A stretch of 64,000 nt of DNA from Macrostomum lignano (taxonomy: Eukaryota). Every line of letters begins with the position of its first letter. Position 1 is the stretch's first letter. Below the pieces are notes generated by a model. It saw nothing but the letters and a program-made list of their open reading frames with translations, was not told where the DNA came from and did not search any database. The position numbers and the translations under genes were made by a program. Positions 20,401 to 58,153 of the stretch are shown here, piece by piece. The stretch is from the NCBI GenBank assembly GCA_002269645.1, contig NIVC01000257.1, positions 434,001 through 498,000 on the forward strand. Direction: 5' to 3'.

Positions 20401-22140
20401 CTTGTCTATTAATAAAATTAATTGTAATTATAATACTACTATTAGTAGGATAGCCAAAACCTTTGTAATCAGCCTACTTTGGGTATGTTATACATAGCTT
20501 ACATAGCTTACCATAGTAATATCATTGATTTAAAAACTAACAAACTTGCAATTGCAAATAAGCTTTAAAAACAAAACTGTATCAATCAATAATATAATGT
20601 CTCCTAATATCAGTCATCTTCTCACAGTGCTTATACAGCTTTTTTCCTCAGCTTGCTTTTTCCTTTAGCTGCTAGAATCAATATAATAGCCTATTTGACC
20701 TCTTAATGGTTTGCAAAATTCTTCTTTAAAAAGTTAGCCTTTAGACATTTGAATAGAAATCTACTATACAAGTTGAAGTCTAGGCTATGGGGACTTTGCC
20801 TAGTCCCTAGATTTACTTGCAGTCTAAGTAGAAAATCTAAAATAGCCTTCCTATAGGTGAGCAACTAGGCCTACACATTGTTTATCTATCATAAAACCTC
20901 ATTCAATTAAATTAGATTTTATTAAAGAGTACATTAAAAGTATGCTAGCTAGTATGCCTAGTATGCTACCTAGTATGTATCAAATAAATTGATACTAAAG
21001 TACAAACTATTGACCTTAGTGTTTAATAAAGTTATAGAGATAGACTTAGGTATTCTTCAAGAATTGTTCACTAAACTCTGGCCATTCACTAAGCTCTTGG
21101 CCAATAGTGATGGTCTCCTTTGTCATCTAGGACTAGGTGACACCAGGTTTATAATTAACAACCAGGCAATTTAGGATATTAACCAAGCTCTTGCTATTGA
21201 ACATTTTCTAGATCTATTTGATGCAAGTGTCTTGTTGAAATTCTTAGTGATTTTTGTTCGTTACCATATTGGAATAACTGCTTGTATGATGTACAACCAT
21301 CTGTTCTACAAAGTTGTTAAATTTTGGTTCCATGCTGCAATACTGCAAAATTAATTATATTTATATACAACATTTACTGTCTAAGCAATAAGCATAATGT
21401 TTATAAACCTGTGCCACATATCTGTAGGATCTGAAATTGTATTTCAATAGATATTAATTACATTTTACTAGTTATTAGTTACATTGTGCAGCAAGGCAAA
21501 ATCAAGTCCTTAAAAAGGCTTGAAAGCACAAAGTGTTCTTCCTATTTCTTTATGGTGTCATTGGCTTTGTCATAGTGTAGTTTGTACAGGCATCTGGAGC
21601 ACTTGAGCCATAAACTGCAATATTATTTAGAAATTTATAGAATTAACACTGCAATGCATGCTACTACAGCAGCCATCCCTTTACCAAAAAAAAGAATCCG
21701 AATAAGAGAAGAACTTTCAAACAATTCAAATGAGTGATTAATGAATGGTTTATTAATATTGGTACATATAGTCAGTCAGCCAGCCATACTCGGGTTCAAT
21801 GGCTTTCAACCCTTATACTTCATTGAGCAGCACCTTGCCTTTGCCACTGTCTTGCTCTCTATCTAAGAAATAAATTAGGCTGTTTCTCTTTGCTTTCTCA
21901 ACTTAGCCTTGCCCAGTATATGTGAGCTGCCAAACTGGTAAATCCAACATGATCCAAACTTACAACCTTCTGACATGCAGTCACCAAAAGATTCAATTTT
22001 AGTTTTGTCAGCAATTTTTGCATTTTACCAATGTTTTTCCTTTCATCTAATGTCTGAAATTGACATTAAATAAAATTGCTTAGATTCACAAATGTATAAA
22101 GTTCAATTTTTCACCTTGCAGATTGCTAAAAATGGCAAAT
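17455..22140. other. CpG-depleted, C-to-T hypermutated AT-rich island, probably a decayed coding or mobile sequence
   Basis: About 7 CG dinucleotides found by eye in ~4.7 kb, whereas AT-rich flanks (13.4-15 kb, 23.9-27 kb) contain many; TAG/CTA are abundant. Confidence 0.75.
18192..18330. repeat. Degenerate 23-bp tandem repeat (about 6 units)
   Basis: Units such as AAGCGTCATGTCAAGCATTAAAT, AAGTGTCATATTAGGCATTAAAT and AAGTGTCATGTTAGGCATTAAAT. Confidence 0.8.
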
Positions 22141-23924
22141 GCAGACGCAGATGAGGATTCATTATCTGTAATCGAGCTGCTTACTTGCTCCATATGCAAC
22201 TGCATTGTATCCGATCCTAGGTTTCTTCCTTGCACTCACTCTGTGTGTCTCACCTGTGTGGATTCTATCAGAGATACCATAGACTGGTGCACTGGCAGCT
22301 GTGCTGTCTGCCAGCACAAACTTCAACTGCCTTTTAGTTCGTCTCAGCTAGGTCGCGATCTCGCCAAATCTCAGCTGGCCAAAATAGTTAAGATCAATAA
22401 AAAGAACAGACAGCCCCTCTGCTCAGCTCCTGACTGCCAGAATGCGTGGAAGGCCGTGTCAGGCTTGTCGAGCCGAGCCATGTGCGAGCAGCATCTGCAG
22501 GCGGAGCTGGACCGGCTGGCTGCAGAGGTGGCCTCACTGAGAGAGCCGGTCGCGGCTGCACTGGCGCCAGCAAGCCGTCTCTCAGGAATTTGTGGTCGAG
22601 CGGCAGAGAAGAAGCAGAGTCTGGAGGCCACGCAGCGAGAGGTGGAGTCGAAGTTCGAGAGACTTCGAGAGCAGCTCGAGGACGCAGAGACGCTGGCGTT
22701 AAAGGCAGTTCGGATCGACATTGAGAGGAGCTCGAGCTGCAGCGAGAGTGCAGAGTCGATTCGAGCTCAGCTGGAGCAGTTTCAGAGTATGGGTGAGAGC
22801 TGGTCGGACTTGCAGACTGCAGGAAGTCAAGGTGCAGTGCAGCTGGTCGATGAGACGAAGAGAGCACTGCGTCAGCTTGAGCACCTTGACGACTCGTTTG
22901 CGACAGTCTCTGATGTAGTGAACTCTGCGTCTGAGAGTTTAGTTAGCAGCTTAAAGCCTGAATTAGAAAAATTGTCCGCTAAACTCGAGAATCTTGTTGA
23001 TCGAACGGTTTCGTGCCGGCGTGTCTTGTCGCTTGAAGAATCAAAGTCCGTTAAACTGCAGAGCACACCTGACTTTGTGACTCTGTTATCGGACTGCAAG
23101 TTGATTTTGGACAAAAATTCGTGTTTCCGTGCTATCCCCGAGAAGGGTAAAATTCCTGCTGGAGCTGTGGAAATTCGTGGCTCAGTTTTGTGTTTTCTAT
23201 ATCGAACAATAAAGCTGAGCCAATGGTGCAGTTGTTTTCATTTCCGAGTTGTGACATTATTTTAGGAGGATGTTTCAAGATTCCGTGTTACGATCAGAGG
23301 GGCTATCCGATTTTTCAAAATTTTGAAGTGGAAGCGTTTTTTGGTGTTTCTTCAAAGAGCGTTTTTATTTTAGCTATCGTGGATGCGATTGTTAGTTTTT
23401 CTATCGGAGGCGAGTTCTTAAAACGCATCCTAACTAAGAATTCGTCAGTGTGGTCATTTTGTTCCAAGTCGGAGCAGCTGATAATTTTTTCACCAAATCA
23501 TGGCATCAGCCTGTATGATTCGGAGCTGCAGCTTATGAAATTAATTTCCGTTTCGGATTTGTCATGTCCTTCCGTATTGTCAATGTGCCCGCAGTTTATC
23601 CTGGCAGACTTGGGTGATAGGCAGGTGTCAAGAATCGACGTTAGCAACCGCAGCGTGACCACACTGGCACAGTGCAAGCACCTGAGAGCTCAACTTCAAC
23701 GCGCCAGTGTTATTTGTGAGGCTGAAAGCAAAATGTGCTTTGTACGCGGTGCAAAGTCAATCTTTGTGATGAACGAACAATTTGGTTTAGTTGAAAAACT
23801 GGAAATAAAAACTGCGCTACCAGGCGGCTTCTTCAAGGTCCGCATCTCAAACATGGATTATCTTGTCGTGTGCAGCGCTGCCGGAAAGTCCGTTGACTTT
23901 ATCTCAATTAATAACTATGAGTAG
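22132..23924 (+). pseudogene. TRIM-like copy A (RING-degenerate B-box-coiled coil-NHL-like) with a 1-nt frameshift near 23209-23213
   Basis: C3HC4 RING CSICNCIVSDPRFLPCTHSVCLTCVDSIRDTIDWCTGSCAVC. Two overlapping ORFs (22123-23265, 23190-23924) join into a paralog of copies B and D if one base is restored (ACA ATAAA GCT GAG versus ACA CAGTAT TCT GAG in B). Could be an assembly error. Confidence 0.8.
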
Positions 23925-27550: not shown

Positions 27551-29356
27551 ATGGCCACCGCCTCAGCAGACGCTTCAGGCGACAGTGCTCAGTCTGTGGA
27601 GCAGCTACTCACCTGCTCTGCGTGCTGCCGCATGGTCTCCGATCCCAGACTGTTGCCATGCTCACACTCTGTGTGCCTCAGCTGTGTGGACTCGCTCAGA
27701 GAAGCCACAGACCGGTGCACAGGCAGCTGCCCTGTCTGCCAGCAGAAAATTCAGCTGCCGAATAATTCTTCTGAGCTGAAGCGCGACATCACGAAGTGTC
27801 AGTTTGCCAAAGCGTTGAATATCACAGAGAAGAGCAGAGAGCTCTGCTCAGCTCCTGACTGCCAGAATGCGTGGAAGGCCGTGTCAGCCTTGTCGAGCCT
27901 AGCCATGTGCGAGCAGCATCTGCAGGCGGAGCTGGACCGGCTGGCTGCAGAGGCGGCCTCACTGAGAGAGCCGGTCGCGGCTGCACTGGCGCCAGCAAGC
28001 CGTCTCTCAGGAATTTGTAGTCGAGCGGCAGAGAAGAAGCAGAGTCTGGAGGCCACGCAGCGAGAGGTGGAGTCGAAGTTCGAGAGACTTCGAGAGCAGC
28101 TCGAGGACGCAGAGACGCTGGCGTTGAAGGCAGTTCGGATCGACATTGAGAGAAGCTCGAGCTGCAGCGAGAGTGCAGAGTCGATTCGAGCTCAGCTGGA
28201 GCAGTTTCAGAGTATGGGTGAGAGCTGGTCGGACTTGCAGACTGCAGGAAGTCAAGGTGCAGTGCAGCTGGTCGATGAGACGAAGAGAGCACTGCGTCAG
28301 CTTGAGCACCTTGACGACTCGTTTGCGACAGTCTCTGATCGGATCGAATCAACGGCTAAAAAGTTTGTTGCAAATCTAACTTTGGAAGTTGAGAAGTTAT
28401 CCATTGAGCTGGAAAAACTGGTTGATCAAACGGTTTCGTGCCGACGTGTGTTGTCGTTGAAAAAATCAAAGTCCGTTAAACTGCAGAGCGCACCTCAGTT
28501 TGTGACTCTGTTATCGGACTGCAAGCTGATGTTGGACAAGAACTCGTGTTTCACTTTCATCCCCTTTAACGATAAAATTCCTGCTGGAGCTGTAGCAATT
28601 CGTGGTTCGGTTTTGTGTTATCTATTTCAAACACAGTATTCTGAGCCAACTATGCACTTGTTTTCATTTCCTGGTTGTGACCTTATTTTAGGAGGATTTT
28701 TCAAAATTCCTTATTGGCATCAGGACAGCGCGCTATGGTCAGAAGATCCTGATTACATAGTTAAAGCATGTTTCGGTGTTTCTTCAAGAAGCGTTTTTAT
28801 TTTGGCTTTCTCAGAAGCGATCGCTAGTTATTATGTCGGAGGCAAGCTTTTAAAACGCATCCAAACTAACCATTCGTCAATGTGGTCATTTTGTTCGAAG
28901 TCAGAGCAGCTACTCGTTTTTTCACGAAATCATGGCATGAGCTTGTATGATTCGGAGCTGCAGATTATGAAATTAATTCCGGTTTCGAATTTGTCGTGTC
29001 CTTCCGTATTGTCAATGTGCCCGCAGTTCATCCTGGCAGACTTGGGTGATGGGCAGGTGTCAAGAATTGAGGTTAGCACCCGCAGCGTGACCACACTGGC
29101 ACAGTGGAAACACCTGAGAGCTCAACTTCAAGGCGCCAGTGTTATTTGTGAAGCTAAAAGCGAATTGTGCTTTGTACGCGTTGAAAAGTCAATCTTTGTA
29201 ATGAACGAACAATTTGATTTAGTTGAAACGCTGGAAATAAGAAATGTACGATCAGGCGGCTTCTTCAAGGTCCGCATCTCAAACGTGGATTATCTTGTCC
29301 TGTGCAGTGCTGCCGAAAAGTCCGTTGACTTTATCTCAATTAATAACTATGAGTAG
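27551..29356 (+). CDS. TRIM-like copy B, intronless RING-degenerate B-box-coiled coil-NHL-like protein (601 aa; in-frame upstream ATG at 27542)
   Basis: RING CSACCRMVSDPRLLPCSHSVCLSCVDSLREATDRCTGSCPVC; heptad-rich coiled coil; ~40-aa beta-blade periodicity with NHL-like FILADLGDGQVSRIEV and MSLYDSELQIMKLI; uninterrupted ORF. Confidence 0.85.
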   Translation: MATASADASGDSAQSVEQLLTCSACCRMVSDPRLLPCSHSVCLSCVDSLREATDRCTGSCPVCQQKIQLPNNSSELKRDITKCQFAKALNITEKSRELCSAPDCQNAWKAVSALSSLAMCEQHLQAELDRLAAEAASLREPVAAALAPASRLSGICSRAAEKKQSLEATQREVESKFERLREQLEDAETLALKAVRIDIERSSSCSESAESIRAQLEQFQSMGESWSDLQTAGSQGAVQLVDETKRALRQLEHLDDSFATVSDRIESTAKKFVANLTLEVEKLSIELEKLVDQTVSCRRVLSLKKSKSVKLQSAPQFVTLLSDCKLMLDKNSCFTFIPFNDKIPAGAVAIRGSVLCYLFQTQYSEPTMHLFSFPGCDLILGGFFKIPYWHQDSALWSEDPDYIVKACFGVSSRSVFILAFSEAIASYYVGGKLLKRIQTNHSSMWSFCSKSEQLLVFSRNHGMSLYDSELQIMKLIPVSNLSCPSVLSMCPQFILADLGDGQVSRIEVSTRSVTTLAQWKHLRAQLQGASVICEAKSELCFVRVEKSIFVMNEQFDLVETLEIRNVRSGGFFKVRISNVDYLVLCSAAEKSVDFISINNYE

Positions 29357-30749
29357 TGAGTAGTTTGCGGTAGGATAACCTTGTTTTTCTGCTTACAAAT
29401 GTGTTTTGGCGTTTCATTGCACTGTCTGCTATTCTCAACGACCATATAGAAGTGGACAAGTCACAGGAAAAAGTCGATCGATAAGTGGTAGATGGGGCTT
29501 CTTCCTATTGGACGCATTGGTTTCTGAACTAACAGTTCTGTTTAATTTACTTGCCTTTGCTTTTAAGGGTTTCGTATGGTTCTAAAACTAATTTGAATTA
29601 AAATGGACCTTTTAAAAAATGAAGCATAAAGCCGACACTGTCCTCGGCTTAAGCCCAGCTTATGCCAAATATCGATCGAACTGAGGTGGGTGAAGGAGAG
29701 GCCATGTTCGCATAGCTTTTTGTCTCATTTCTTGACTGCAGTCTTCTCTGGAGTAGAGCATATTGTAACAAAATGTGGCTCAATGTGCATACCAATTGCC
29801 AATGTTCATTTTCTTCCACTGTTGTACTCAAGTTTTTCCTTCCTTTTCCGAATCTTTGAAAGGGAAGTTTTTCATTTATCCATAAGTTTTTGCAAATTTT
29901 TATATTTCCATTCTTTAGTGTCCTTACAGGCTTACAGTCAGTTCGATTTTTATACTATTTTTTGCTTTTTATAAGCATTGTGCAAATAATCCTTACAATT
30001 TGACTTCCATTTTCAATTGCGTTTTTTCTTACTTGACCAATATTGTATCTGTATATCTGCTACAAGTTTTAATTTTTTGTCTGATAATTATTACTTTTAT
30101 TACCTGTCAATTTTAGCCATTTAAGCGTCATTTTTGTTGATTTTGTTGTTGAAACGCCCCATTTTGGAGTGATTTCCTATGCTTTTTCAAAAGCATTTAC
30201 AAGTCATTTTAGTTGTGTTATCCAGCAAATATTCGTTAAAAGTCTTTGTCTTTGCTATGCTAAGAAACTTGGCATTAGAAACTCCAGACTAGAAGTGACC
30301 GATGAGTTCGAGACTCGACGATGTGTTATTAACTCCGAGACCATGTTATTTTCTATATTTTGCGTTGGCAAAGTTCCAGTAGTTATAAGCTAGTTTCTAA
30401 CGGGAGTACCACGTTTGCTTGCTGAGGCTTGCTTGTTGTATGTGTACAGCCTCCGCTACATTCAACAGACGGCTTGTCAAAGTTTTCTTACCGATTACTA
30501 TGGGGATATCTTATGACCACGGATACCTAGTTTATAAGGCTTACAGGAGCTAATTATTGGGTGAAGTGCTATGCGGTATAAAAGGGTTGCATGAATGCAT
30601 AAAATTGATGGACTCTTCCGCCTATTGGCGTTGCCATTCTTGACAAATCAGAGTAAATGCTAATTTAGCCGTCAATCTTTCAGTTGATAAGAAGTGCATG
30701 GGAAACTTGATAATAAGCAGACACCCTGTAGGTATAGAAACGTCGTGTT

Positions 30750-30960
30750 GTTTGTGAAGCTGAAAGCAAATTGTGTTTTATACGCGGTGCAAAGTCAATC
30801 TTTGTGATGAACGAACAATTCGAATTGGTTGAAACACTGGAAATAAAAACTGCGCTACCAGGCGGCTTCTTCAAGGTCCGCATCTCAAACATGGATTATC
30901 TTGTCGTGTGCAGAGCTGCCGGAAACTGTTGACTTTATCTCAATTAATAACTACGAGTAG
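30750..30960 (+). pseudogene. TRIM-like copy C, 3'-terminal fragment only
   Basis: Last ~70 codons of the family (..CEAESKLCFIRGAKSIFVMNEQF..GGFFKVRISNMDYL..NNYE stop) fused directly to upstream non-coding sequence, with an extra 2-nt deletion near 30925. Confidence 0.85.
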
Positions 30961-32734: not shown

Positions 32735-33079
32735 TACTTTATCGCCAGCAACAAAGCAACGGCTTTCAATGCTTCAGTAGGTAAGATTAGCAATCTGCGC
32801 CCCCTCCGTTTGGGATTGATATGGGCAGTAATGTCTCAACGGTTGTGTGAGTAGGCTACTTCATCCAGAATACGCAGCTTACTCGCAGGTAACTGAAAAG
32901 ATCCCAAATCATATGGGATTTAGTATGCAGGAAGAATAGCATCTGTAGGGCGTAAATGAGTGCCTTTCATTAGCCATGAGGCTGTGTTTTGTGAAGTAGG
33001 ACTTACAAACCTGTGCTTTTTATTCACTCCAAATCGTACTATTTTTTGTTTAACTAATAAACCTTTCTGCAAACTGGCC

Positions 33080-38920: not shown

Positions 38921-38967
<47 letters not shown>

Positions 38968-41397
38968 CTACTCTCTCCCCTCTTCATTCTCCTGTTTCCT
39001 CTTCTCTCTCCCTGTCTCTCCTCTCTTCTCTAGTCTCTGTAATCTCTTCTCTCTTATCTCTCCTCTGTTCTCTCCACTCTCCCATCTCTCGTCTGTTCAT
39101 CTGCTCTCTCATCTATCATCTTTACTCTCTTATACGTTCTCTCACTTATCTCCTCTGTACTCTTCTCTTCACCTCTTCTCACTCCTCTCTTTCCTTACTC
39201 CTCTCTTCTTTTCTTTTCCCTTTCTATACTCTCTCTCTCTTCTATTATCTTCTCTCGTCTCTCTGCACTCTCCTCTCACCTTTTTCATCTCTCATCTCTT
39301 CTTTGATCTGTCTCATCTCTACAATCTCATCTCTTTCCTCTCTCCTCCTCTTCCCTTTACTCTCTCATCTCTCCTTTCTCCCCTCCTCTCACTTCTTCTT
39401 CCCTTCTTCTCTGCTCTCTCCTCACCACTTGTCTCTCCTCTTATATTCCATGTTTTCTCATATCCCCCTCTTGCCTCTCCTCTCTTCTAATAGTCTATTC
39501 CTTCTCCTTTCCACTCTCATCTGGCCCGCACATAAGCTAGATTCTTTATCTGGCTTTTGAAGTAAAAGTCTGCCAATCCCTGCTTCGAAAGCCAGTTTGT
39601 GGGACGTACTACTCTCATCGTTATTCTCATGCTTTGATCACGTCATTTTTCTTGCCAATTTGCAGTCCTGAAAGGAATTTGTGTATTTTCAGCTCCACTG
39701 CAGTCTGCATCAGTCTAACAACCAAGGAAATACGCATTTCTTAGGAGGACATTTAAAATTTAAAGTACTTTTAAGAGAAACCTAAAATTTTCATGGTGTG
39801 CCTAATTTAGTAGGGTTGTATTGCATTGCATCGCATCGCCTTTTCATAAATCTTTCGCTTTTACAAACCATGCTGGATTTCCTCGATTTGCCAATTGCCA
39901 TCCACTGTTAAACTGCTGCAGAGTTTGCCAATACAGAGGGGAGGGCAATAGTTAGAATTTCTCACTAAACTGTTATGGCTAAACGTAGCCTCTCCACTCT
40001 CGGGGTGCAGAGAAGGTTATAAATAAAGTTATTCCAAAACACTGTACATTCGCTATGTACATTGAGCCCTATTGCCTGACCCTTCGTCTGGCTCTGGGGG
40101 AATGAGTGAGTGAGTGGCACAAACAACAGAAAAAGCAGACAAACTTCACATGCTTACAGTTTCTTTTTCGGTTGAGTTACAGAGTTGAAACTTTACATTT
40201 AGACAGAGAATGAGTCAATGAAGAATTGTGTCAAGTTTGAAGTCAATCGCTTTATGTGGAGCAAACTTATGGCAGCTGAAAGTTAGTCAATTTTGAAACC
40301 CTTTTACACCCTTTACCCAGATCAGGAAAGAGAGGCAGGCGGGCGGAGGTTGGGGTGGCTGTCTCGCTGAAAAAACAGCCAAACTTTAAAAGTGCACAGC
40401 GCCATTCAGGATTAACTTTGAGACTCAAAATTTTACACAATTGTGTCAAAATAGTTGAAAATTGATTGTGTCAAATTTGAAGAGGATCGGTAGAAGTGGA
40501 GCAGCGCTAAGGAGGCTTTAGTAAAAAAATCGCGCATTTTGAGCAGTTTTTTGCACTTTTAGGTAGGAAGACTCAAATTTAGGAAATTTAAAGGTAGCCT
40601 AAGACATTCTCCATAGTGAGTTTAGGGTGGGTGTAAAATTTGGTGTCATTTGGTTGAGTGGTTTGGGAGTCCATAGCGATCAAAAATGTCCACACACACA
40701 CAGACAGAGTTTTGATTTTTATAGGTATACGAGGCCAACTCCTCCTCTGGAGGAGAAAGGGGAAGAACTCCCATCACCGGAATTCCATTCCCTGAAATCC
40801 ATCAGCTGAAATTCCATGACTTGAATCCCATCTTCCAAATCATCTCCAAATCCTCTGTAAAGCCTTTCAAATACCATATCTTGTTTTCCCTGTTCGCAAA
40901 AACTGACTGCCATTGTCCAGACTCAGATTCTTCTGTCTCCTCTCTTCTCTTTTCTCTCCTCTCACGTCTCTCATCTCTACCACCTTATTTATCTCTTCTC
41001 CCTCGTCTTTCGTCTTTCTCTTCTGTCTCCTTTATCCCCTGTTTTCTCCTCTCTCCTCTCTCCTCTCTTCTCTCCTCTCTCATCTCTCATCCCTCATGCC
41101 TCATCTCACTATTTCTTTCTCCTCTACTCTCAGCTCCTCTCTTCTCTCTCCTCTCATCTCTCCTGTCTCCCTCTGCTATCTCATATATTCCCTCTCATCT
41201 CCTCTCTCCTCTTTTCTTCTCTCTCCCTCTTCGTTCCCGCCTTACTCCCCTCTTCTCTCCCATCTGTCATGTCTAATCTGTCCTCTCTCATCTCTACTCT
41301 CTTTTCTATAATCTCTTCTCTCTTCTCTTTTCACTCTTCTCTTTACTCTCTTTACTGACTGACTGAAGATACCAAATCCATCAAAATCCCTCCGTGA

Positions 41398-41669
41398 AAC
41401 AGAAATCCTCTCCGCGAAACAGAAATCCTCTCCGCGAAACAGAAATCCTCTCCGTGAAACTGGGCTCCATGGAAATCCTCTGAGTGAAACTGACATCCAT
41501 CAAAATCGTCTCCGTAAAACAGAAATACATCTAAATTCTCTCCACGAAAAATAAATCCTCTCCGTGAAACCGAAAACCATCAGAATACTCCGTGAAACTG
41601 GACTCAATCGAAATTTTCTCTGTCAAAAAGAACTTAACTTTCAGAATTCATTGGTTAGGGTTAGGGTTC
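41398..41669. repeat. 20-bp tandem repeat (AAACAGAAATCCTCTCCGYG) followed by a short (GGTTAG)n tract at 41654-41669
   Basis: Directly visible. Confidence 0.75.
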
Positions 41670-43553
41670 GAGCTGCACAGAGCTGCGTGTTGAATTAATT
41701 GAATCAATTAATTGCGCAAACCATTTCTCAGTCAGACAGTATCAGTCTTATTTAAAGTTAAATAAACAGTTGCGCAATCTAAATCAACCCTCCAATACAC
41801 AGCAGCAGTGAGAAGTTGAACCCTCCCCCAACTTTATCTATTACGTCTCGCAAAACTAAGTACAATCTTTGCAGAAAGTTAAAAGTATGAAAATAGTTTT
41901 TCAAATGCTGTGCTTTTTCTTTTCATATATAAAGCAAACAACTTATATCCCCAAACTCAGCGTTGCAAGATCTTTCCAGCAATATAAGTCTCTCCTCTCA
42001 AAGTTTAAAACTCGAGGAACAGTTAGCGTTTGAAATTTACCGATTTCCCGACTGCTTGCTAGAGAAGCTCGCAAGTTTATTCATTGAATTTCACTGCCAA
42101 ACTAATACACAGGGCTGCCAATAATAAAACCAAATGAATCTCGACACAGTCTATCTATTTACACTGTACAACTGCTATGTACACTCAGCCCAAGCCCAAC
42201 CCCCCAGTCTGGGGGAATCATTAAATTGAACTTAACCCCCCAACACGCGGGGGGTTTTATTTGCATTGAACGCAGAACACGCGCACCCACCACCCCTCAA
42301 TACACAGCGGCCCGCGGGCGGAGGTTGGGGTGGCTATTTTTACAAACTGGCTGAAGCCCCAGGCAGAGTGACCAAAGAAGGTTATTGGGGGTTAAAAAAG
42401 CAGTTTTCTGCTTTTTTAGGGATGTTAAAATGTGAAAATTAAAAATTAAAATAGCCTAAAGCCTGCTCCGGAAAATTTGCAGTTTTCCCATATAAGTTTC
42501 GACGTTGACTTGGCAGAATTGTAGGAGTTCACTTGCTACATACAGACAGACAGACATACAGACAGACAAACATCGCGTCGGTTTTAGTATTAGGAGATAA
42601 CTTTTTTGTATTTTTTTCATAATTTATTTTTTGTGTCCTTACAGTGTCTTCTATTTTTGTACTGGCTATTTTTACTATTTATGAGATTTGCGCAAATAAC
42701 CCTAGAAATTTTTTCATTCTAAACCAAGATTTTCTCTGTATCAGCCACAAATTTTTTATTTGTATTTATCTAACATTAAATGAATACACCGAATTATTTA
42801 TACTTTTGAGACTGTAAATGTTTTGCGATTTTAGCGTAATTTATCGTTAATTTTGTTGTTGAACCGTCCTATTTGTGTGATTTTTCAGAAAGGTTTACAA
42901 GTCCTATTTTAGTTTTATTATCCAGCAAATATTCGTTAAAGATCTTGTCTTTGCTATGCCAGAAAACTTGGCACCATAGATTTTATATACACTAGATAGG
43001 CTACTCAGTGACACCCAGCCAAACCATTGAATCTATAGAAAGCTTTTCAAGAAGTGGTAATTTCAGCTATTTCTTAGTAGTTAGTGCGCATTTTTGTCAG
43101 TAGCTGAAGCGAACATTAAATTACCTTTTTTATTCAGCTCTGTCAGCAGAGACTTAAATGCCATTCCATGAATACTGTGGGATTATAGTCAGCAAAGTGC
43201 GTTTTTAGAGAGAGAAATCGTCTATACATTTCTTCTGGGTCAGAAGACTGTTGGAAAGCGGTGTGTAGTTTTTAAAGAAAACTGAAAGAAATTGGCTTAA
43301 GCGATTATACAAATGATATAAGGCAAACTGAACTTGGACAGTTGTATTTAACGAAAACCGTGACTTGAAACGAACAATACGGAAGGCAACACTGAGACTG
43401 TGTTAGTTGAAAATGGGTAAAGCAGACAAGTAGTAAATAAATTACACAAACAGCAGAATAATACACAGAGCCAAAGCAAGGGAAGGCAGCTAGCGTCTGC
43501 TCCACAAATAATTTAGCTGCATCATTTTATTGCCATTTTATTACTGACAATAG

Positions 43554-44177
43554 TGTGACAGTGTGATTCGTAGAAGCGCGTGTATCGTATTTCTTTATTT
43601 TCATATGCATACCGTGCTACTACTGTATTCTTCCATTTATTTTAACAATATTCGTACGTATTATTATCGCGCTATTTTTACTGTTAATTGCTTTGTTTTT
43701 GTAGCCTCGTATGTATTTATTCTATTATTTGTATTTCATTCATATCGTTATTATTTGTCGTAAAGTAGTTCTACCTATGTACTTGTACTGACGTATGTAA
43801 TTCTTGCATGATATATTTATCGATTGATTTGTACATGTACATTGCGCGCCGCGTGGGGGGTTTGTCTGGGTTTTGGATTAGGGTCGCTGTTGTTTGTTAT
43901 CTGTTTACCTTACCAATTAAATATACGCTTGCAGCCAGTCGCCGCTCTCCCCCTGCGCTCCTGAGTTTTCGCTCCGCTTCTCGCGGGCCCCTTAGCCGTC
44001 GCATTCAATTGCTTTAGTCGCACTAAAATTAAGCAGCTACCAATCAAAACCTAACCTTCAATTCAAAATACCAAATCTGAATCTGCAATTTACGCTAAGG
44101 GAAGTCGGCTACTGGCTCTAGATTATCAAATTTAACCGCTACACAAACTGCACGTCTTCCTGCCTTTATTCGTCACA
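43554..44177. mobile_element. Solo LTR (624 bp), probably Ty3/Gypsy type
   Basis: Termini TGTGAC...GTCACA, perfect 4-bp TSD ATAG (43550-43553 and 44178-44181), absent from the paralogous spacer near 26310-26355. Confidence 0.7.
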
Positions 44178-45215
44178 ATAGTCCACGAGTGATTTTTGGC
44201 AGTCATTTTCTACACATTGACTGAATGCGCAGTGGCCTATCTAGTGTATTATTATATGAGATCTATTTTTGGCACTAAAAACCCTGGAAGTGACCAATAG
44301 ATAAATATATAATTGGACGATGTGTTATTAAATCTGAAACCATTTCGCTGTGAATTCTTTCTATGTTGACTTTTACATTAAGGATGCCGCCTTAAAAACA
44401 TCTATATTCAATAGTTACGTACGAGCGTTTGCGTGAGAACACTATAAAGCCAGTTACCCCAGGATAATTTGCAGCCAAATCTCGGTGTCTTTACTGCTCC
44501 CTTGTATCCGATTGCATTCCTTATCATAAATTTTATAGCTCGAAAAAAAGCTTAATATAATGGTAAACATTGCTTTTTTGATATTAGTTTCACTGTTGCC
44601 TTTTATTTAAAAACCCGTCAATATTTTGTGTAGGCTCATTGTTGCAGCAAGTTCAATTATAGTTATAAGTTAATTTTAAACGGGAGAAACAAGTTTGCTT
44701 CTTGAATGTGTTCAGCTTCCTCTAAACTCAACAGGCAGCTTGTCGAAGTTTTCTTGCCTATTACTGAGGGGGATATCTTGTGCTCACAGATTCGTAGTAA
44801 TTATGAGGCTCGCAGGTGCTAGTTATTGGGTGAAGTGCTGTGCGGTATTATAGGATGGCATCAGTAAATAAAATTGATGCTTTCTGTCGCCTGTTGGCAT
44901 TGTCATTCTCGAGTCAAAGTGATTGCTAATTTAGCTATAAAAGCATGGGTAGTGTTGTGGATTCCAAAAGCTTCCACTAGCAAACTTTAGCGAGCAAGCT
45001 TCATGCATTTTTTTTAAATATTGAATACAATATTATACTGCTTAAGATTTTTACCAGTTTTTAAAAAGCAGCTCCGCTTGAGAAAAATTTTGCGGCTCTC
45101 AAGCAAATCTATTGCAGTCAATAGGTTAATAGAAAAATAATTTCACTCTGTCAGTCTTATATCCAAAGAATTCATTTATCTTATTTGTATTGATTGCTTT
45201 CCGTTTCAGCTAGCC

Positions 45216-46410
45216 ATGGCCACCGCCTCAGCAGACGACTCAGGCGACAGTGCTCAGTCTGTGGAGCAGCTACTCACCTGCTCTGCGTGCTGCCGCATGG
45301 TCTCCGATCCCAGACTGTTGCCATGCTCACACTGTGTGTCTCAACTGTGTGGACTCGCTCAGAGAAGCCACAGACCGGTGCACAGGCAGCTGCCCTGTCT
45401 GCCAGCAGAAACTTCAGCTGCCGAATAATTCTTCTGAGCTAAAGCGCGACATCACCAAGTGTCAGCTCGCCAAAGCGTTGAATATCACAGAGAAGAGCAG
45501 GGAGCTCTGCTCAGCTCCCGACTGCCAGAATGCGTGGAAGGCCGTGTCAGCCTTGTCGAGCCGAGCCATGTGCGAGCAGCATCTGCAGGCGGAGCTGGAC
45601 CGGCTGGCTGCAGAGGCGGCCTCACTGAGAGAGCCGGTCGCGGCTGCACTGGCGCCAGCAAGCCGTCTCTCAGGAATTTATAGTCGAGCGGCAGAGAAGA
45701 AGCAGAGTCTGGAGGCCACGCAGCGAGAGGTGGAGTCAAAGTTCAAGAGACTTCGAGAGCAGCTCGAGGACGCAGAGACGCTGGCGTTGAAGGCAGTTCG
45801 GATCGACATTGAGAGGAGCTCGAGCTGCAGTGAGAGTGCAGAGTCGATTCGAGCTCAGCTGGAGCAGTTTCAGAGTATGGGTGAGAGCTGGTCGGACTTG
45901 CAGACTGCAGGCCTCAGTGCAGTGCAGCTGGTCGATGAGACGAAGAGAGCACTGCATCAGCTTGAGCACCTTGACGACTCGTTCTCTATGGTTTCTGACA
46001 GAGTGAAATCAGCTGCCGAGCTGAGTTTCGATTTTTTGTCTTCGGAGTTGAAGAATTTCGCGAGCGAACTGGATGCTCTTGTGGACATCACCTTGCGCGA
46101 TACTGAGGTTCTGCGGTTTAAAGAGACAAAACCTGTACTGTTTAATGGAAATCCGAAGTTTGTGGCCTGCCTCCTACACACCAATCTGTTGCTGAATCTG
46201 TTGGCAAAAATTTTGTTCGCAAGCTGCCAGCTTCTCTCTTACGAGTATTTGTTGTTTGCCAAACAGTTGAGGCCCATATTATGCAGCTGTTTACCTTTCC
46301 AGGCTGTGAGCCAGTCCTTGGTGCCCAGTGGGAGTGTGAGGCCCTTGGCTGGAAGGGAAAAAATAACAGGCTAAACAATTTTTTTTGGAGATTCTGCTCA
46401 CAGCCGCCTG
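45216..46410 (+). pseudogene. TRIM-like copy E, frameshifted and truncated
   Basis: 2-nt (CT) deletion inside the RING at about 45332 (CACTGTGTGTCTC versus CACTCTGTGTGTCTC in F); a further frameshift near 46200 (MQLFTFPGCEPVLG lies in another frame); no recognisable NNYE C-terminus. Confidence 0.8.
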
Positions 46411-49071
46411 CTTAAAGTCGCCACTCTATGCGCCAGTGAGCAGTTTCACTTGAACTATTCTGAGATAAAAGATACGAGAAAACTGATCGGGGTAGCTTTA
46501 ATCCCTCCAGCCCTCACACAACGCTCCCATCTTCATTAACCCAAGTCTGTCGCGTGGCGTAGCTGAGTTGCGTCACTCGCAAGATTGAGAGACTTTACCT
46601 GAACTCTCAAAAGTGGCGACCACAGACGGAATCTTCTCTGATGGCGACTTTTCGATGTTGCATATTCTAAGATATCGGCTTTTTTGTTGTCATTAATTTT
46701 TTGCCTTTGTGTAACACAAATTTGCAACGAAATTTAGTCTCCCCTGAACACTTGCTGTCATAGATTTTAATACATATAAATTTTTTCTTATGTCAATTAC
46801 TTTTTTGGTAACTTCTTGACTAACCGAATTAAACCCGATGACCCGAAGAGTCCATTGTGCAATTATAGAGTATATGATTATCAAGTTATCTCGTATTTTA
46901 AATTGCAATAATATTTCAAGTTGAACACTTTTTTTCACCATAGGATAACTTATAGGAGCTTTAATGTTTGCAGTTCTCGCTATCTTCATTTTGGTTTGTA
47001 TTCTTATAGCTATTTTTTCATTATCTGGATATTTATGACATCAGTGGCATGCTACTTTGAGCAATCTAAGCTTGAATGAGTTTTAGATAAGGCTATTGTG
47101 CTTTCGTTTTATTATGTCAACTTAAATATTTATTTTCAGTAATACTTTTGCTTGCTGAAGTGGCTTGTTGAATGTGTTCAGCTTCCGCTGCACTCAACAG
47201 GCAGCTTGTCGAAGTTTCCTTGTCGATTACTAAGGTGATATCTTGTGGCCACCGATTCGTACTGTAGTTTATGAGTCATGACACCGACTTGAAATGCATA
47301 TATGGAAGTAGTTACACATGAGCGTAACTATGAGAATGCTATAAAATACTTGAAAACCAGGAACGTGTATGAAATTAATGGCCTTCTTTTTCTTGACAGA
47401 TTGTGATTGAGATTGAAAAGACACTGAAGACGAGACTCACTGATGCATCTTTAATGTTCACAATGACAAACATGATTAATTAATAACTCAGTATAATTTG
47501 CAGTCAATTCTCGATTTTTTAACTACTCGTACTTTCTCCATATTGTCGGTTGTGTTACTCATAATTTTATTTTTGTTAACTTTCCAAACTTGTAACGTGA
47601 CAATAACTTGAATGTAATATTCAACAAAGAATTTTTTAATCCGTTTATTTATTCTTTTTGATATGATTTCTTAATTTAACAGCCGTGAATATTTTATGTA
47701 GGCTCATAGTTGGAGTCAGCAAACAAAGTCCAAGTATAGTATAACTTAATTTTAAGCTTTAAAAACTAAGTTTTAAGCACTCAACAGGCAGCTTGTGGGA
47801 GTCTTTTTGCCGATTACTAATGGAATGTCTTGTGGCCACAGTTTCCTAGTTTAAGGCTCATAGGAGCTAGTTATTGGGTGAAGTGCCATGCAGTATTTTT
47901 AGTGGTCTGTGTCACCTATTCGCGTTGCCATTTTTAATAAATGCAAATTTATGATAAATTACGAATGCGCTAATTTATCACCAACAACAAAGCAACTGTT
48001 TTCTATCCTTCAGTAGGTAAGACTAGCAATCTGCATCCCCGTTTGTAAGACAAAGGAATATAAATGTTTGAATTAACTACCTGTTGGTTATGACCTTGAA
48101 AAGTCACCATTTCTAATATATTTGGGGAAAAATGTTTAAAGCATAAAAGCATCCACTATAAAGCTTGTTATTTAGCCTAAGATATCAGATCCTGTATGAG
48201 CTTTGGTTCAAAGCATATTAGGCGCCCCAATAAGCCTCAGCGTTTCAGCAATGTCCCCATAAGCCTTGACATCTCTTTTAAAAATGAGCAAATTACAATA
48301 TTATTTATAAATGCGCACACCTAGACAGCTGATTTTTATATATTGTATGATATATTTGAGGCAAAGTAGTTAATACAACGACAAACTAGTAGGTACAAAA
48401 GCTAGTAAATGAAAATGTTTTTCTACGTAACGGTAGTTCAAATCTCGTGCGCTTTTCGGTTTTTCAGTATGATATGAAGCTTCAAAGTAACTGCATTCTG
48501 GCATGTCACGTCTGAATTTTGCTAGAATTTCATTTACGTATCTTCTTGAGTGACATACTTAACATACTTGACATGCTTAACATACTTAATCCTCTGCAGT
48601 CAGGTTTTTCGATTTCGAAATTTTATCCTCGATTTGCTGTTAAAATTTATCACGAGGTCCGCTAAAAGTTCAGAGGCAGTAAACTTCACTTTCACCCACG
48701 GTCCCATAGCCACTATAAGCAGGTCCTACGTATTCTCGTAAGTAAGGGATATCTTGGTTTCGCAGCAAGCACCCTGTAGGTATAAAAATATCGGTAGTGT
48801 TGTGAAATCTATAACTTCTACTAGCAAACTTTGGCAAGCAAGCGTCATGCACCAATTTTAAAATATGATGCTGCTCAAACTTTTTTACCAGTTTTTTAAA
48901 AGCAGCTGCCGTTGAGACAAGTTTTGCGGCTCTCAATCTTGTCAAACAATCTGCCAGAAGCAAACCTATTGCAGTCAATAGGTTAATAAAGAAATAAGTT
49001 TCACTCATTGAGTCCTATATGCAAAGAGTTCAATAACATTATCGCTATTAATTAATTAATTTCTGCCATCC

Positions 49072-50886
49072 ATGGCCACCGCCTCAGCAGACGACTCAGG
49101 CGACAGTGCTCAGTCTGTGGAGCAGCTACTCACCTGCTCTGCGTGCTGCCGCATGGTCTCCGATCCCAGACTGTTGCCATGCTCACACTCTGTGTGTCTC
49201 AGCTGTGTGGACTCGCTCAGAGATGCCACAGACCGGTGCACAGGCAGCTGCCCTGTCTGCCAGCAGAAACTTCAGCTGCCGAATAATTCTTCTGAGCTGA
49301 AGCGCGACATCACCAAGTGTCAGCTCGCCAAAGCGTTGAATATCACAGAGAAGAGCAGAGAGCTCTGCTCAGCTCCTGACTGCCAGAATGCGTGGAAGGC
49401 CGTGTCAGCCTTGTCGAGCCGAGCCATGTGCGAGCAGCATCTGCAGGCGGAGCTGGACCGGCTGGCTGCAGAGGTGGCCTCACTGAGAGAGCCGGTCGCG
49501 GCTGCACTGGCGCCAGCAAGCCGTCTCTCAGGAATTTGTGGTCGAGCGGCAGAGAAGAAGCAGAGTCTGGAGGCCACGCAGCGAGAGGTGAAGTCGAAGT
49601 TCGAGAGACTTCGAGAGCAGCTCGAGGACGCAGAGACGCTGGCGTTGAAGGCAGTTCGGATCGATATTGAGAGGAGCTCGAGCTGCAGTGAGAGTGCAGA
49701 GTCGATTCGAGCTCAGCTGGCGCAGTTTCAGAGTATGGGTGAGAGCTGGTCGGACTTGCAGACTGCAGGCCTCAGTGCAGTGCAGCTGGTCGATGAGACG
49801 AAGAGAGCACTGCATCAGCTTGAGCACCTTGACGACTCGTTTGCGACAGTCTCTGATGTAGTGAAGTCAACAGTTCAGGCCAGTGTGGAGAGTTTGAAGG
49901 CCAGCAATGAAAAACTATGCAGTGAATTGGAGGTTCTTCTTGATCGGAAAGTTTCAGGTGGCTCGGTGTTATCGCTTAAAGATTCAAAGCATGTTGGATT
50001 TGAGTTCGCTCCTCTATTTGTAGTCTGCTTGTCGGATGTGAAGCTCATGTTGGACTCAAATTTGTATGTCTGTAAACTGAATGGCAGCCTTCCAACTGGC
50101 GCTACTACGCTACCAAAGTCGATCATGTTTGTCATCTTCAAACGGTCGAATTATTTCGATTCCAAGCAAGAATTTCAACTATTTTCGCTTCCTAATTGCA
50201 TCCCAATTTTCGGAGCGCGATTTGCCTTGCAGTTTCCGAATTCGTATTACTCTCGTACTGAAACGATTGAAGCCATTTTTGGCGCTTCTTCTGGGTGTTT
50301 TGTTGTCGCTATTTATGGAAAACTCTTCACTGCAGATGCCAGTGGAAAATTGATAAAGTCCGTTGGCATAGAGGATAGCAAACTGTGGCACTTTTCTCCG
50401 GAATCAGACCAGCTCACGGTTTCTCACTCAAGCTGTGGTGTCCAGTATGTCTCTGTGTTCAACATCAATCTGGAAAAAATTCGAACCGTAGTGATTTCTG
50501 CTTCTTCCATCTCGTCAGTGTTCGCCGTTGGGCCGAAATTCATGTTGGTAGACTTTGGCGACGGCAAGGTGTCGAGAGTTGATGTAGACAGTCGCAGCAT
50601 CTCCGAGCTGGCTCAGCTTGACAGACTGGTTGGTCGACACCGTCGGACCACTGCAGAGCCTGGTGCCTTTGCGCTGTTCTTTGGCGCTGGCAATGCGGTA
50701 TTTGTTGAAGGCAAGCATGCTGTGGCCATGAACAAGAGCGGACAGGTGGTGCAAGCTCTGCAGCTGAAGAACAAGGTGTCGAGAACTGCAACTGTTTTTC
50801 GGATGGCGAACGAGTACTATCTGGTCATGCTCAGTGCATCCTGCAACTCCATGGAGCTTGTGTCAGTTGACCCGACTTGCTTTTGA
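49072..50886 (+). CDS. TRIM-like copy F, intronless (604 aa), with the most divergent C-terminal propeller-like domain
   Basis: RING and coiled coil nearly identical to B and E; C-terminal half only distantly similar (FQLFSLPNCIPIFGA, FMLVDFGDGKVSRVDV, AVAMNKSGQVVQAL); uninterrupted ORF. Confidence 0.85.
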   Translation: MATASADDSGDSAQSVEQLLTCSACCRMVSDPRLLPCSHSVCLSCVDSLRDATDRCTGSCPVCQQKLQLPNNSSELKRDITKCQLAKALNITEKSRELCSAPDCQNAWKAVSALSSRAMCEQHLQAELDRLAAEVASLREPVAAALAPASRLSGICGRAAEKKQSLEATQREVKSKFERLREQLEDAETLALKAVRIDIERSSSCSESAESIRAQLAQFQSMGESWSDLQTAGLSAVQLVDETKRALHQLEHLDDSFATVSDVVKSTVQASVESLKASNEKLCSELEVLLDRKVSGGSVLSLKDSKHVGFEFAPLFVVCLSDVKLMLDSNLYVCKLNGSLPTGATTLPKSIMFVIFKRSNYFDSKQEFQLFSLPNCIPIFGARFALQFPNSYYSRTETIEAIFGASSGCFVVAIYGKLFTADASGKLIKSVGIEDSKLWHFSPESDQLTVSHSSCGVQYVSVFNINLEKIRTVVISASSISSVFAVGPKFMLVDFGDGKVSRVDVDSRSISELAQLDRLVGRHRRTTAEPGAFALFFGAGNAVFVEGKHAVAMNKSGQVVQALQLKNKVSRTATVFRMANEYYLVMLSASCNSMELVSVDPTCF

Positions 50887-58085: not shown

Positions 58086-58153
58086 ATTTTGAGTTTTTTA
58101 AAATTGGATCCTCACGCTGGGTTCCCCTTGGCTCTTGCCTTTGTCTCTCCCCC

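What the first reader, a model, noticed from the sequence alone, without database searches (positions are those of the whole stretch)
22132..50886. Diversifying cluster of intronless TRIM-NHL-like genes built from shuffled modules
Six copies (A-F) share one architecture, but their segments give conflicting relationships. The RING comes in three types (A; D; B=E=F). A ~470-bp coiled-coil core (AMCEQHL..DDSF) is nearly identical in all five long copies, yet an indel splits it as GSQGAVQ (A,B) versus GLSAVQ (D,E,F). The linker after the core is shared by A and D (VVNSASESLVSSLKPELEKL) and differs in B, E and F. The C-terminal propeller-like domain is similar in A/B/D and strongly divergent in E and F. 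A homogenised oligomerisation core with variable ligase and sensor ends is what one would expect of an invertebrate immune or anti-transposon receptor family under birth-and-death evolution. The functional reading is inference.
Basis: partly seen in the sequence, partly recalled or inferred. Interest (0 to 1): 0.8.

Follow-up and report, generated by a model that had tools for sequence, protein, structure and literature searches.

The report
Flatworm RING-ligase gene array swapping halves
A tandem cluster of flatworm-specific RING ubiquitin-ligase-like genes keeps one 465-bp coiled-coil segment almost identical by gene conversion and uses it as the crossover point for swapping front and back halves between copies. 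This is a clean example of a well-known way gene families evolve, and there is no evidence yet for the proposed immune role.

Summary
The window is Macrostomum lignano DNA (contig NIVC01000257.1). It carries three intact single-exon genes (B, D, F; about 600 aa), one copy with a 1-nt frameshift (A), one truncated pseudogene (E) and one fragment (C).

Segment histories conflict at 99-100% bootstrap. The 465-468-bp core is 95.5-98.7% identical among copies. Its synonymous divergence is 0.02-0.09, against 0.75-1.1 in the RING and 0.23-2.1 in the C-terminal domain. That pattern indicates gene conversion, not protein-level constraint.

The two other copies of the locus in the same assembly carry a single D/F fusion gene whose switch point lies inside the core. 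This is the signature of an unequal crossover. Variants private to one array and shared by its paralogs show ongoing homogenisation.

"TRIM-NHL-like" is only loosely right. The RING is TRIM-type and the heptad coiled coil is supported, but there is no B-box and no NHL or WD40 Pfam hit. The C-terminal domain has no homologue outside this species among 1.84 billion representative proteins. It is probably a beta-propeller, on low-confidence models.

No window of the C-terminal domain has dN/dS above 1. The immune or anti-transposon reading is untested speculation.

The parts
22132..23924 (+). Copy A: A-type RING, core, A/D-type linker, A/B/D-type C-terminal domain. A 1-nt deletion in an A-run near 23211 splits the frame.
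   Evidence: The ORFs 22123-23265 and 23190-23924 lie in different frames. The alignment shows the deletion relative to the intact counterparts A1 and A2.
27551..29356 (+). Copy B: intact single-exon ORF of about 601 aa from MATASAD (604 aa from the upstream ATG at 27542). It has a B/E/F-type RING, the core, a private linker and an A/B/D-type C-terminal domain.
   Evidence: RING Pfam hits; best PDB RING hits are TRIM2 and TRIM3.
30472..31119 (+). Copy C: a fragment in which upstream-like sequence is joined directly to the last ~75 codons of the C-terminal domain (CDS remnant about 30747-30960). It is present in all three copies of the locus.
   Evidence: blastn and tblastn; profile positions 234-304 only.
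33074..34876 (+). Copy D: intact ORF (likely ATG near 33080). It has a D-type RING, the core with the 3-bp-shorter indel allele, an A/D-type linker and an A/B/D-type C-terminal domain.
45216..46412 (+). Copy E: pseudogene. It has a B/E/F-type RING with a 2-bp deletion near 45333, the core, and a private linker. Only the first ~90 positions of a third type of C-terminal domain remain, after another frameshift near 46146, and then the gene is truncated.
49072..50886 (+). Copy F: intact 604-aa ORF with a B/E/F-type RING, the core, and an F-type linker and C-terminal domain (about 33% amino-acid identity to B).
   Evidence: GenBank annotates only its last 383 aa (P0004).
27872..28339 (+). Homogenised core (coiled-coil coding), shown here for B. 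The equivalents are A 22447-22914, D 33383-33847, E 45535-45999 and F 49393-49857. It is the tract of gene conversion and the crossover site.
   Evidence: 95.5-98.7% identity. dS is 0.02-0.09 against 0.75-1.1 (RING) and 0.23-2.1 (C-terminal domain). Fisher tests. The D/F switch falls inside it. Array-private shared variants. Heptad periodicity z = 5.3.
33400..49859 (+). The roughly 16-kb interval (D 3' half, CT-rich repeats at 35.4-41.3 kb, E, F 5' half) that is absent from the other two copies of the locus, where a single D/F fusion gene stands instead.
   Evidence: L001 and L006 are collinear with the window up to 33855 and resume at 49120. The site-by-site switch is shown.

Best explanation
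This is a tandem array of Macrostomum-specific, single-exon genes. Each gene encodes a TRIM-type RING, a coiled coil of about 180 residues, and a 305-residue orphan C-terminal domain that is probably a beta-propeller. The products are presumably E3 ubiquitin ligases whose C-terminal domain selects the target.

The family evolves by two linked recombination processes centred on the 465-bp coiled-coil core:
1. Ectopic gene conversion between paralogs keeps the core nearly identical. The sequence on either side has diverged too far to be converted.
2. The identical core serves as the homology tract for unequal crossing over. These crossovers join the promoter-plus-RING half of one copy to the linker-plus-C-terminal half of another. 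They also add or delete copies.

Shown here: the mosaicism, the synonymous-site homogenisation, array-specific shared variants, and a D/F fusion gene of the haemoglobin-Lepore type (an unequal-crossover fusion of two tandem paralogs), with its switch inside the core, in two other copies of the locus.

Inferred: E3 ligase activity, coiled-coil dimerisation, the propeller fold, and the direction of the D/F event (a deletion from a long form like the window).
For: Species and context:
- All homologues are M. lignano proteins. The window is NIVC01000257.1 of assembly Mlig_3_7.
- About 85% of that assembly exists as three paralogous copies (PMC10733133). This explains loci L001 and L006.

Mosaicism:
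- Neighbour-joining bootstrap gives RING (D,DF1) 1.00 and (A*,D*) versus (B*,E,F) 1.00. It gives linker (A*,D) 0.99 and (DF1,F) 1.00, and C-terminal domain (DF1,F) 1.00.
- PHI p <= 0.001 for the whole gene and for the A/B/D C-terminal domains.

Conversion rather than constraint:
- Core dS is 0.02-0.09. RING dS is 0.75-1.1, linker dS exceeds 1.2 (A-D 0.28), and C-terminal dS is 0.23-0.26 among A, B and D and 1.6-2.1 against F.
- Fisher p = 2e-9 to 6e-18 (core versus RING) and 1e-3 to 1e-6 (core versus C-terminal domain).
- The core tree groups A2 with B2 (0.93), that is, by array and not by orthology.
- At core column 254, a T is private to A2, B2 and DF2.
- DF1 carries the indel allele of its neighbour A1, whereas its orthologue DF2 carries the D/F allele.

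Unequal crossover:
- DF1 and DF2 match D at nearly every D-versus-F difference up to about 33,400 (at most 2 per 50-column block match F). They match F at nearly every such difference from about 49,859 on.
- Both hybrid genes are intact ORFs.

Protein:
- RING Pfam hits; best PDB RING hits are TRIM2, TRIM5, TRIM3 and RNF135.
- Heptad periodicity z = 5.3.
- Both C-terminal models are all-beta, and all of the top 50 Foldseek hits for each are beta-propellers.
- There is a weak WD40 profile match.
- RING omega is 0.25-0.37.

Transcription:
- The GenBank gene models of this assembly come from RNA-seq and transcript assemblies (PMC5730564), and models exist at all three loci.
Against: - The C-terminal models are poor (pLDDT 41-44, TM about 0.2), so the propeller fold is not established.
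- No Pfam repeat family matches the C-terminal domain.
- The WD40 E-value of 1e-7 comes from summing one blade matched against many near-identical blades. Each individual match is insignificant.
- No biochemical or expression data specific to these genes were available.
- Several copies are damaged: A (frameshift), B1 (TGG to TAG), C and E. C-terminal omega is 0.54-0.70. Part of the family may therefore be decaying.
- The direction of the D/F event rests on parsimony. The three contigs come from a draft PacBio assembly of a neopolyploid, whose copy-number errors are documented.
- GC3 is high in both the RING and the core, so it gives no specific signal of biased gene conversion.
Confidence: 0.75

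Rival explanations
1. One reading: an innate immune or anti-transposon receptor family. Its sensor (C-terminal) and ligase (RING) ends would be under diversifying selection, and its oligomerisation core would be kept uniform by selection.
For: - The architecture resembles antiviral TRIM-type restriction factors (own knowledge).
- The array is tandem, has pseudogenes and shows module exchange.
- C-terminal omega (0.54-0.64) is higher than RING omega (0.25-0.37).
- The domain is lineage-restricted.
Against: - No 30-codon window of the C-terminal domain has pN/pS above 1; the maximum is 0.97.
- The family is small: 3-4 usable genes per locus and no other members in the protein databases.
- No expression or infection data are available.
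- Core uniformity extends to synonymous sites, which recombination explains without any selection for uniform oligomerisation.
Confidence: 0.1
2. The mosaic is an assembly artefact: haplotypes or subgenome copies wrongly joined or expanded in a draft assembly of a neopolyploid.
For: - Copy-number errors are documented for Mlig_3_7.
- The 465-bp identical core could mislead short-read polishing and transcript assembly. The GenBank models P0001 and P0005 are indeed chimeras joined inside the core.
- The frameshift in A lies in a homopolymer.
Against: - The copies differ by 20-50% outside the core, so they are not haplotypes of one another.
- The order A, B, C-fragment is reproduced in three independent contigs.
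- Two contigs share the same D/F structure, with hundreds of concordant diagnostic sites on each side.
- The D 3' half and the E modules are unique sequences that must exist somewhere in the genome.
- A 465-bp repeat is much shorter than PacBio reads.
Confidence: 0.06
3. The core is conserved by strong purifying selection on the protein, or on an RNA or antisense element, and the mosaic dates from ancient exon-shuffling-type events rather than ongoing conversion.
For: - The core encodes a coiled coil, which is likely needed for dimerisation.
- Antisense ORFs of 157-176 aa overlap the core in A and B.
Against: - Synonymous divergence in the core is 10-50 times lower than in the flanks.
- Variants are shared by paralogs of one array and absent from their orthologues.
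- The core tree groups by array.
- The antisense ORF of at least 150 aa is not kept in D, E or F.
- The DF fusion shows that recombination in the core happened about as recently as the three locus copies diverged.
Confidence: 0.04
4. The cluster is a decaying, largely non-functional young gene family. The intact ORFs are recent duplicates that have not yet been disabled.
For: - Damaged copies: A (frameshift), B1 (premature TAG), C (fragment), E (truncated).
- C-terminal omega is 0.54-0.84, including between orthologues.
- No homologues exist outside the species.
Against: - Three ORFs of about 600 aa are intact in the window, and A1, A2, B2, DF1 and DF2 are intact elsewhere.
- RING omega is 0.25-0.37, with all eight zinc ligands kept in A, B, D and F.
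- A, B and D have stayed open despite dS of about 0.25-1.
- Transcript-based gene models exist.
Confidence: 0.05

Closest known systems
TRIM-NHL proteins (TRIM2, TRIM3, TRIM32, TRIM71; Brat, Mei-P26)
   Same: - The N-terminal C3HC4 RING has TRIM2 and TRIM3 as its best solved-structure matches (E = 2.5e-7 and 1.7e-5).
- A long heptad coiled coil follows.
- Next comes a C-terminal domain of about 300 residues. Its low-confidence models hit the NHL propellers of Mei-P26, TRIM2 and Brat among other propellers.
   Different: - No B-box and no filamin domain.
- No NHL repeat match in Pfam even at E <= 10.
- The C-terminal domain has no sequence relative outside M. lignano.
- The genes are single-exon, species-restricted and tandemly arrayed, unlike the conserved single-copy TRIM-NHL genes (own knowledge).
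RING-coiled-coil-WD40 E3 ligases (COP1/RFWD2, RFWD3, TRAF7)
   Same: - Same domain order without a B-box (own knowledge).
- The only sequence-level hint for the C-terminal domain is to WD40 blades: 2ymu_A with summed E = 1e-7, and 6r60.
- The COP1 RING appears among the weak hits.
   Different: - No Pfam WD40 hit, and the individual blade matches are insignificant.
- No orthology to any of these conserved genes.
Hybrid genes made by unequal crossing over in tandem families (haemoglobin Lepore delta-beta fusion, red/green opsin hybrids, GYPA/GYPB hybrids, KIR domain shuffling)
   Same: - The window has two tandem paralogs (D, F). The other copies of the locus have one fusion gene with the 5' part of one and the 3' part of the other.
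- The switch lies within a tract of near-identity.
- Conversion occurs in the same tract.
   Different: - The homology tract is a short internal coding segment flanked by strongly diverged sequence, so each crossover recombines two functional modules (RING and target-binding domain).
- The comparison is between subgenomic copies of a neopolyploid, not between alleles in a population.
Expanded, fast-evolving TRIM families of vertebrates (teleost finTRIM; the mammalian TRIM5/6/22/34 cluster)
   Same: Lineage-specific tandem RING-coiled-coil genes with a variable C-terminal recognition domain and pseudogenes (own knowledge for the vertebrate side; here).
   Different: - The vertebrate families carry a B-box and a B30.2/SPRY domain with documented positively selected loops (own knowledge).
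- Here there is no SPRY domain, no window with omega above 1, and only a handful of copies.

Membership tests
TRIM (RING-B-box-coiled-coil) family | N-terminal C3HC4 RING finger | tested here: met
   Pfam zf-C3HC4 and zf-C3HC4_3 match residues 24-71 of B, with better scores in D. The best PDB hits are TRIM2, TRIM5, TRIM34 and TRIM3 RINGs. All eight Cys/His ligands are aligned in A, B, D and F.
TRIM (RING-B-box-coiled-coil) family | One or two B-box zinc fingers between the RING and the coiled coil | tested here: not met
   There is no zf-B_box hit for whole proteins at E <= 1 or for the isolated inter-domain segment at E <= 10. Only a conserved C-x4-C ... C-x2-H pattern is visible, which is too few ligands for a B-box.
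TRIM (RING-B-box-coiled-coil) family | Coiled coil after the zinc fingers | tested here: met
   A home-made heptad a/d contrast over residues 116-295 of B is 0.48 against 0.28 in shuffles (z = 5.3). The segment is 59% E/Q/K/R/L/A and 3% P/G. Many weak hits to coiled-coil Pfam families also appear. No structure was modelled for this part.
TRIM-NHL subfamily | C-terminal six-bladed NHL-repeat beta-propeller (Pfam NHL) | tested here: not met
   There is no NHL hit at E <= 10. Foldseek lists NHL domains only alongside WD40, BamB and other propellers, at TM about 0.2, from models with pLDDT 41-44. A propeller fold in general remains plausible but inconclusive.
RING-coiled-coil-WD40 ligases (COP1, RFWD3, TRAF7 type) | WD40-repeat propeller recognisable by sequence | tested here: inconclusive
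   The C-terminal profile against PDB hits the repetitive WD40 protein 2ymu_A with E = 1.1e-7. However, the per-blade independent E-values are 3 or higher. There is no Pfam WD40 hit.
Tandem multigene family under concerted evolution with unequal crossing over | Paralogs of one array more alike in the converted tract than orthologues; synonymous sites homogenised | tested here: met
   Core dS is 0.02-0.09 against 0.23-2.1 in the flanks. A2 and B2 group together at 0.93 bootstrap. Array-private shared variants and an indel allele switch between DF1 and DF2 are seen.
Tandem multigene family under concerted evolution with unequal crossing over | Hybrid gene with its breakpoint in the homology tract, and copy-number difference between haplotypes or homeologues | tested here: met
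   DF1 and DF2 are essentially D-like upstream and F-like downstream, with the switch inside the core. The window carries about 16 kb more than L001 and L006.
Diversifying immune receptor families (finTRIM / TRIM5-like) | Positive selection (omega above 1) concentrated in the recognition domain | tested here: not met
   Nei-Gojobori omega is 0.54-0.64 for the A/B/D C-terminal domains, and the sliding-window maximum is 0.97. The test is crude: few sequences, and recombination is present.
Diversifying immune receptor families (finTRIM / TRIM5-like) | Induction by infection, or restriction activity | not testable with these tools
   No expression or functional data are accessible. No paper mentions the gene identifiers.

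The most novel reading that the evidence does not exclude
The near-identical coiled-coil core may not be just a by-product of recombination. It could be a selected 'junction cassette' with two roles. First, it would let any RING half be recombined with any target-binding half at the DNA level. Second, it would let all paralogous proteins heterodimerise. Together these would give the worm a combinatorial repertoire of E3 ligases used against non-self (pathogens, transposons or allosperm). The repertoire would be built on a propeller-like domain with no relatives outside Macrostomum.
Probability: 0.08. Interest if true: 0.75.

Novelty: new variant of a known kind. Interest (0 to 1): 0.35.

Why it matters
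This locus is an unusually clean natural example of how a short internal tract of identity can drive both concerted evolution and module swapping in a gene family. The "before" state (D and F) and the "after" state (the DF fusion) are preserved side by side in the subgenomes of a neopolyploid flatworm.

For Macrostomum genomics it has two practical consequences. It flags a species-restricted RING ligase family that current annotation misrepresents, with chimeric models joined inside the core and only a partial model for F. It also shows that the three subgenomic copies differ by gene-creating rearrangements.

It does not yet bear on invertebrate immunity.

Tried and rejected
- **NHL, WD40 or any Pfam assignment of the C-terminal domain:** none at E <= 10.
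- **B-box:** none.
- **Homologue search with a C-terminal profile** against 1.84 billion representative proteins: only the family itself was found. The word-indexed search with B found only M. lignano proteins.
- **AlphaFold2 of the B and F C-terminal domains** with the shallow family alignment: pLDDT 44 and 41. The Foldseek results therefore indicate only a fold class.
- **Internal repeat detection by hhalign self-comparison:** only one weak off-diagonal hit, at 4% probability.
- **Biased gene conversion as a core-specific GC3 signal:** rejected, because the RING of B, D, E and F has equally high GC3.
- **Antisense ORFs over the core as a reason for conservation:** rejected. An antisense ORF of at least 150 aa is present only in A and B.
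- **Transposon ORFs between the genes:** none of at least 90 aa with any family signal in 41.3-48.9 kb.
- **Exact-protein look-up of the neighbouring methyltransferase** to reach the third contig: found only the window's own contig. The third contig was reached through cluster members instead.
- **Literature:** no paper names these genes or describes such a family in flatworms.


Full report
**What is there**

The region holds six related units on the + strand:
- B (27551-29356), D (33074-34876) and F (49072-50886) are uninterrupted ORFs of about 600 codons.
- A (22132-23924) has the same layout, but a 1-nt deletion in an A-run near 23211 shifts the frame.
- C (30472-31119) is a fragment in which upstream-like sequence is joined to the last ~75 codons.
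- E (45216 to about 46412) is a pseudogene. It has a 2-bp deletion in the RING and a second frameshift near 46146. Only profile positions 2-91 of the 304-position C-terminal domain remain.

All database relatives are hypothetical proteins of the flatworm Macrostomum lignano. The window is part of contig NIVC01000257.1 of assembly Mlig_3_7.

The flanking genes are ordinary:
- an aldehyde dehydrogenase exon (4202-4969);
- a lysine methyltransferase (53176-53757);
- a DEAD-box helicase (from 54617);
- a RING-H2 gene (59272-60249).

Per 60-column blocks of a nucleotide alignment:
- The RINGs of B, E and F are 95-100% identical. A and D are each 46-88% identical to the others.
- A core of 465-468 bp is 95.5-98.7% identical in all ten pairs.
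- The start of the linker is 97% identical between A and D, but 47-60% in every other pair.
- The C-terminal domains of A, B and D are 63-97% identical, while F is 40-70% identical to them (about 33% in amino acids).
- The indel GSQG versus GLS divides A and B from D, E and F.

Neighbour-joining trees of the segments conflict at 99-100% bootstrap. A home-made PHI permutation test for recombination gives p <= 0.001 for the whole gene and for the A/B/D C-terminal domains, and p = 0.023 within the core.

**Why the core is uniform**

Nei-Gojobori estimates show that the uniformity extends to synonymous sites:

| Segment | dS between paralogs |
|---|---|
| Core | 0.02-0.09 |
| RING (A, B, D) | 0.75-1.1 |
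| Linker | above 1.2 (A-D: 0.28) |
| C-terminal domain (among A, B, D) | 0.23-0.26 |
| C-terminal domain (against F) | 1.6-2.1 |

The deficit of synonymous differences in the core is significant against both flanks. Fisher p = 2e-9 to 6e-18 against the RING, and 1e-3 to 1e-6 against the C-terminal domain. Constraint on the protein cannot erase synonymous differences, but gene conversion can.

**Three copies of the locus**

About 85% of the Mlig_3_7 assembly is present as three paralogous copies, roughly 2% apart (PMC10733133). The two other copies of this locus were recovered:
- L001/L004, from NIVC01003594.1;
- L002/L006, from NIVC01000390.1.

Both carry A, B and the C fragment, followed by a single gene (DF1, DF2) and then the same methyltransferase and helicase.

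DF1 and DF2 agree with D at nearly every position where D and F differ (at most 2 per 50-column block match F). This holds from 600 bp upstream to about window position 33,400. From about 49,859 to 300 bp downstream they agree with F at nearly every such position. The switch lies inside the core. Both are open reading frames.

This is the structure expected of an unequal crossover between D and F. It removes the D 3' half, about 6 kb of CT-rich repeats, E, and the F 5' half.

I judge the long form ancestral. The D 3' half (dS about 0.25 to A and B) and the private E modules are much older than the divergence between the three locus copies (dS 0.00-0.12). This direction is an inference.

**Conversion is ongoing**

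In the core, three lines of evidence point to continuing exchange:
- One variant (column 254, T) is private to the L006 array and shared by its three full-length paralogs.
- DF1 carries the indel allele of its neighbour A1, whereas its orthologue DF2 carries the D/F allele.
- The core tree groups A2 with B2 at 0.93 bootstrap.

Smaller exchanges are visible by eye in the C-terminal domains. The end of A2 looks B-type, and the middle of A1 looks D-type. PHI for that domain is significant.

**What the proteins are**

- **RING.** It is a C3HC4 finger of TRIM type with all ligands kept. Omega is 0.25-0.37.
- **B-box.** None is detectable.
- **Coiled coil.** Residues about 116-295 show strong heptad periodicity in a home-made test (z = 5.3).
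- **C-terminal domain, sequence.** The 305-residue domain matches no Pfam family at E <= 10. A profile search finds no protein outside M. lignano among 1.84 billion representatives.
- **C-terminal domain, weak hint.** A profile search of PDB sequences gives a summed E of 1.1e-7 to a highly repetitive WD40 protein. Each blade match is individually insignificant.
- **C-terminal domain, models.** AlphaFold2 models of the B and F domains are all-beta but of low confidence (pLDDT 44 and 41). All of their top 50 Foldseek hits are beta-propellers of several families (WD40, BamB, NHL), with E about 1e-4 but TM about 0.2.

So the domain is probably a propeller of about seven blades. Its family is undetermined, and "NHL" is not supported.

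The architecture is as close to RING-coiled-coil-WD40 ligases (COP1, RFWD3, TRAF7; own knowledge) as to TRIM-NHL proteins.

**Selection and function**

C-terminal omega among A, B and D is 0.54-0.64, and no 30-codon window exceeds 1. This suggests relaxed or mixed constraint. It does not demonstrate diversifying selection, although the test is crude.

The GenBank gene models of this assembly derive from RNA-seq and transcript assemblies (PMC5730564), so the loci are transcribed. Two of the models (P0001, P0005) are chimeras that jump from one paralog to a downstream one inside the identical core. These are most likely artefacts of short-read assembly.

M. lignano genes average 4.9 introns, so the single-exon coding sequence is atypical for the species.

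Nothing here bears on an immune or anti-transposon role, and no paper mentions these genes.

**Verdict**

The finding is real and the mosaic reading is right. The mechanism is the classical pairing of gene conversion and unequal crossing over in a tandem family. Here it is centred on a short coding tract, so each crossover recombines a ligase module with a target-binding module.

The protein family is a species-restricted variant of RING-coiled-coil-propeller E3 ligases, not a demonstrable TRIM-NHL member. Interest is moderate. The locus is a neat evolutionary example and calls for corrected annotation, but it is not a new kind of system.

Noticed in passing
L001 10001-16965 (P0001); L006 10001-23998 (P0005): Two GenBank gene models are chimeras. 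They take the 5' part from the A-type copy and the 3' part from a paralog 5-12 kb downstream, through an 'intron' whose ends lie in the identical core. In the window's own contig only the last 383 codons of F are annotated, and B and D are not annotated at all.
   Followed up: partly
L001 about 15480 (copy B1, codon 108): The orthologue of B in contig NIVC01003594.1 has TGG changed to TAG, a premature stop. Otherwise it is 99% identical to B, so the same gene is open in one subgenomic copy and closed in another.
   Followed up: partly
window 35400-41300; L006 3902-6547: About 6 kb of CT-rich low-complexity repeats (periods 2-19 bp, strong negative GC and AT skew) lie between D and E. They give spurious Ser/Leu-rich ORFs of up to 408 aa. 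A related block (84% identity) lies upstream of A2 in the third copy of the locus, but not upstream of A in the window.
   Followed up: partly
window 24866-25629: A minisatellite of 26 copies of a 29-bp unit (C9TAAATCCGTCACTGAACCTG) at 95% match lies between A and B.
   Followed up: no
window 1756-13346 and 52548-63900: The rest of the window is studded with more than 15 minisatellite arrays of 17-47-bp units. Examples are 9413-10665 (18 bp x 68), 60689-61803 (22 bp x 51) and 58146-58946 (23 bp x 35). They account for the GC-rich stretch at 6-12 kb and for many long spurious ORFs. The 18-bp unit recurs at 12921-13346, and a 28-bp unit recurs at 6136-6462 and 62323-63090.
   Followed up: no
window 22394-22867 (-) and 27822-28352 (-): Antisense ORFs of 157 and 176 aa run across the core in A and B. 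No antisense ORF of at least 150 aa is listed over the cores of D, E or F. They are probably a by-product of the GAG/CAG/GCN-rich sense codons.
   Followed up: partly
window 59272-60249 and beyond 63000 (L005 16412-17488, 20007-20582): Two unrelated RING-H2 (zf-RING_2 / zf-rbx1) genes lie downstream of the helicase. The neighbourhood therefore holds several RING genes of different types.
   Followed up: no
codon alignment columns 440-500 and 565-600 (A1, A2 versus B, D): Short patches in the C-terminal domain look exchanged between paralogs by eye. The end of A2 reads like B (DLVETLEIRNVRSGG) and the middle of A1 reads like D (FSPDHGIGLY...FISVSD). This suggests conversion tracts outside the core as well.
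   Followed up: partly
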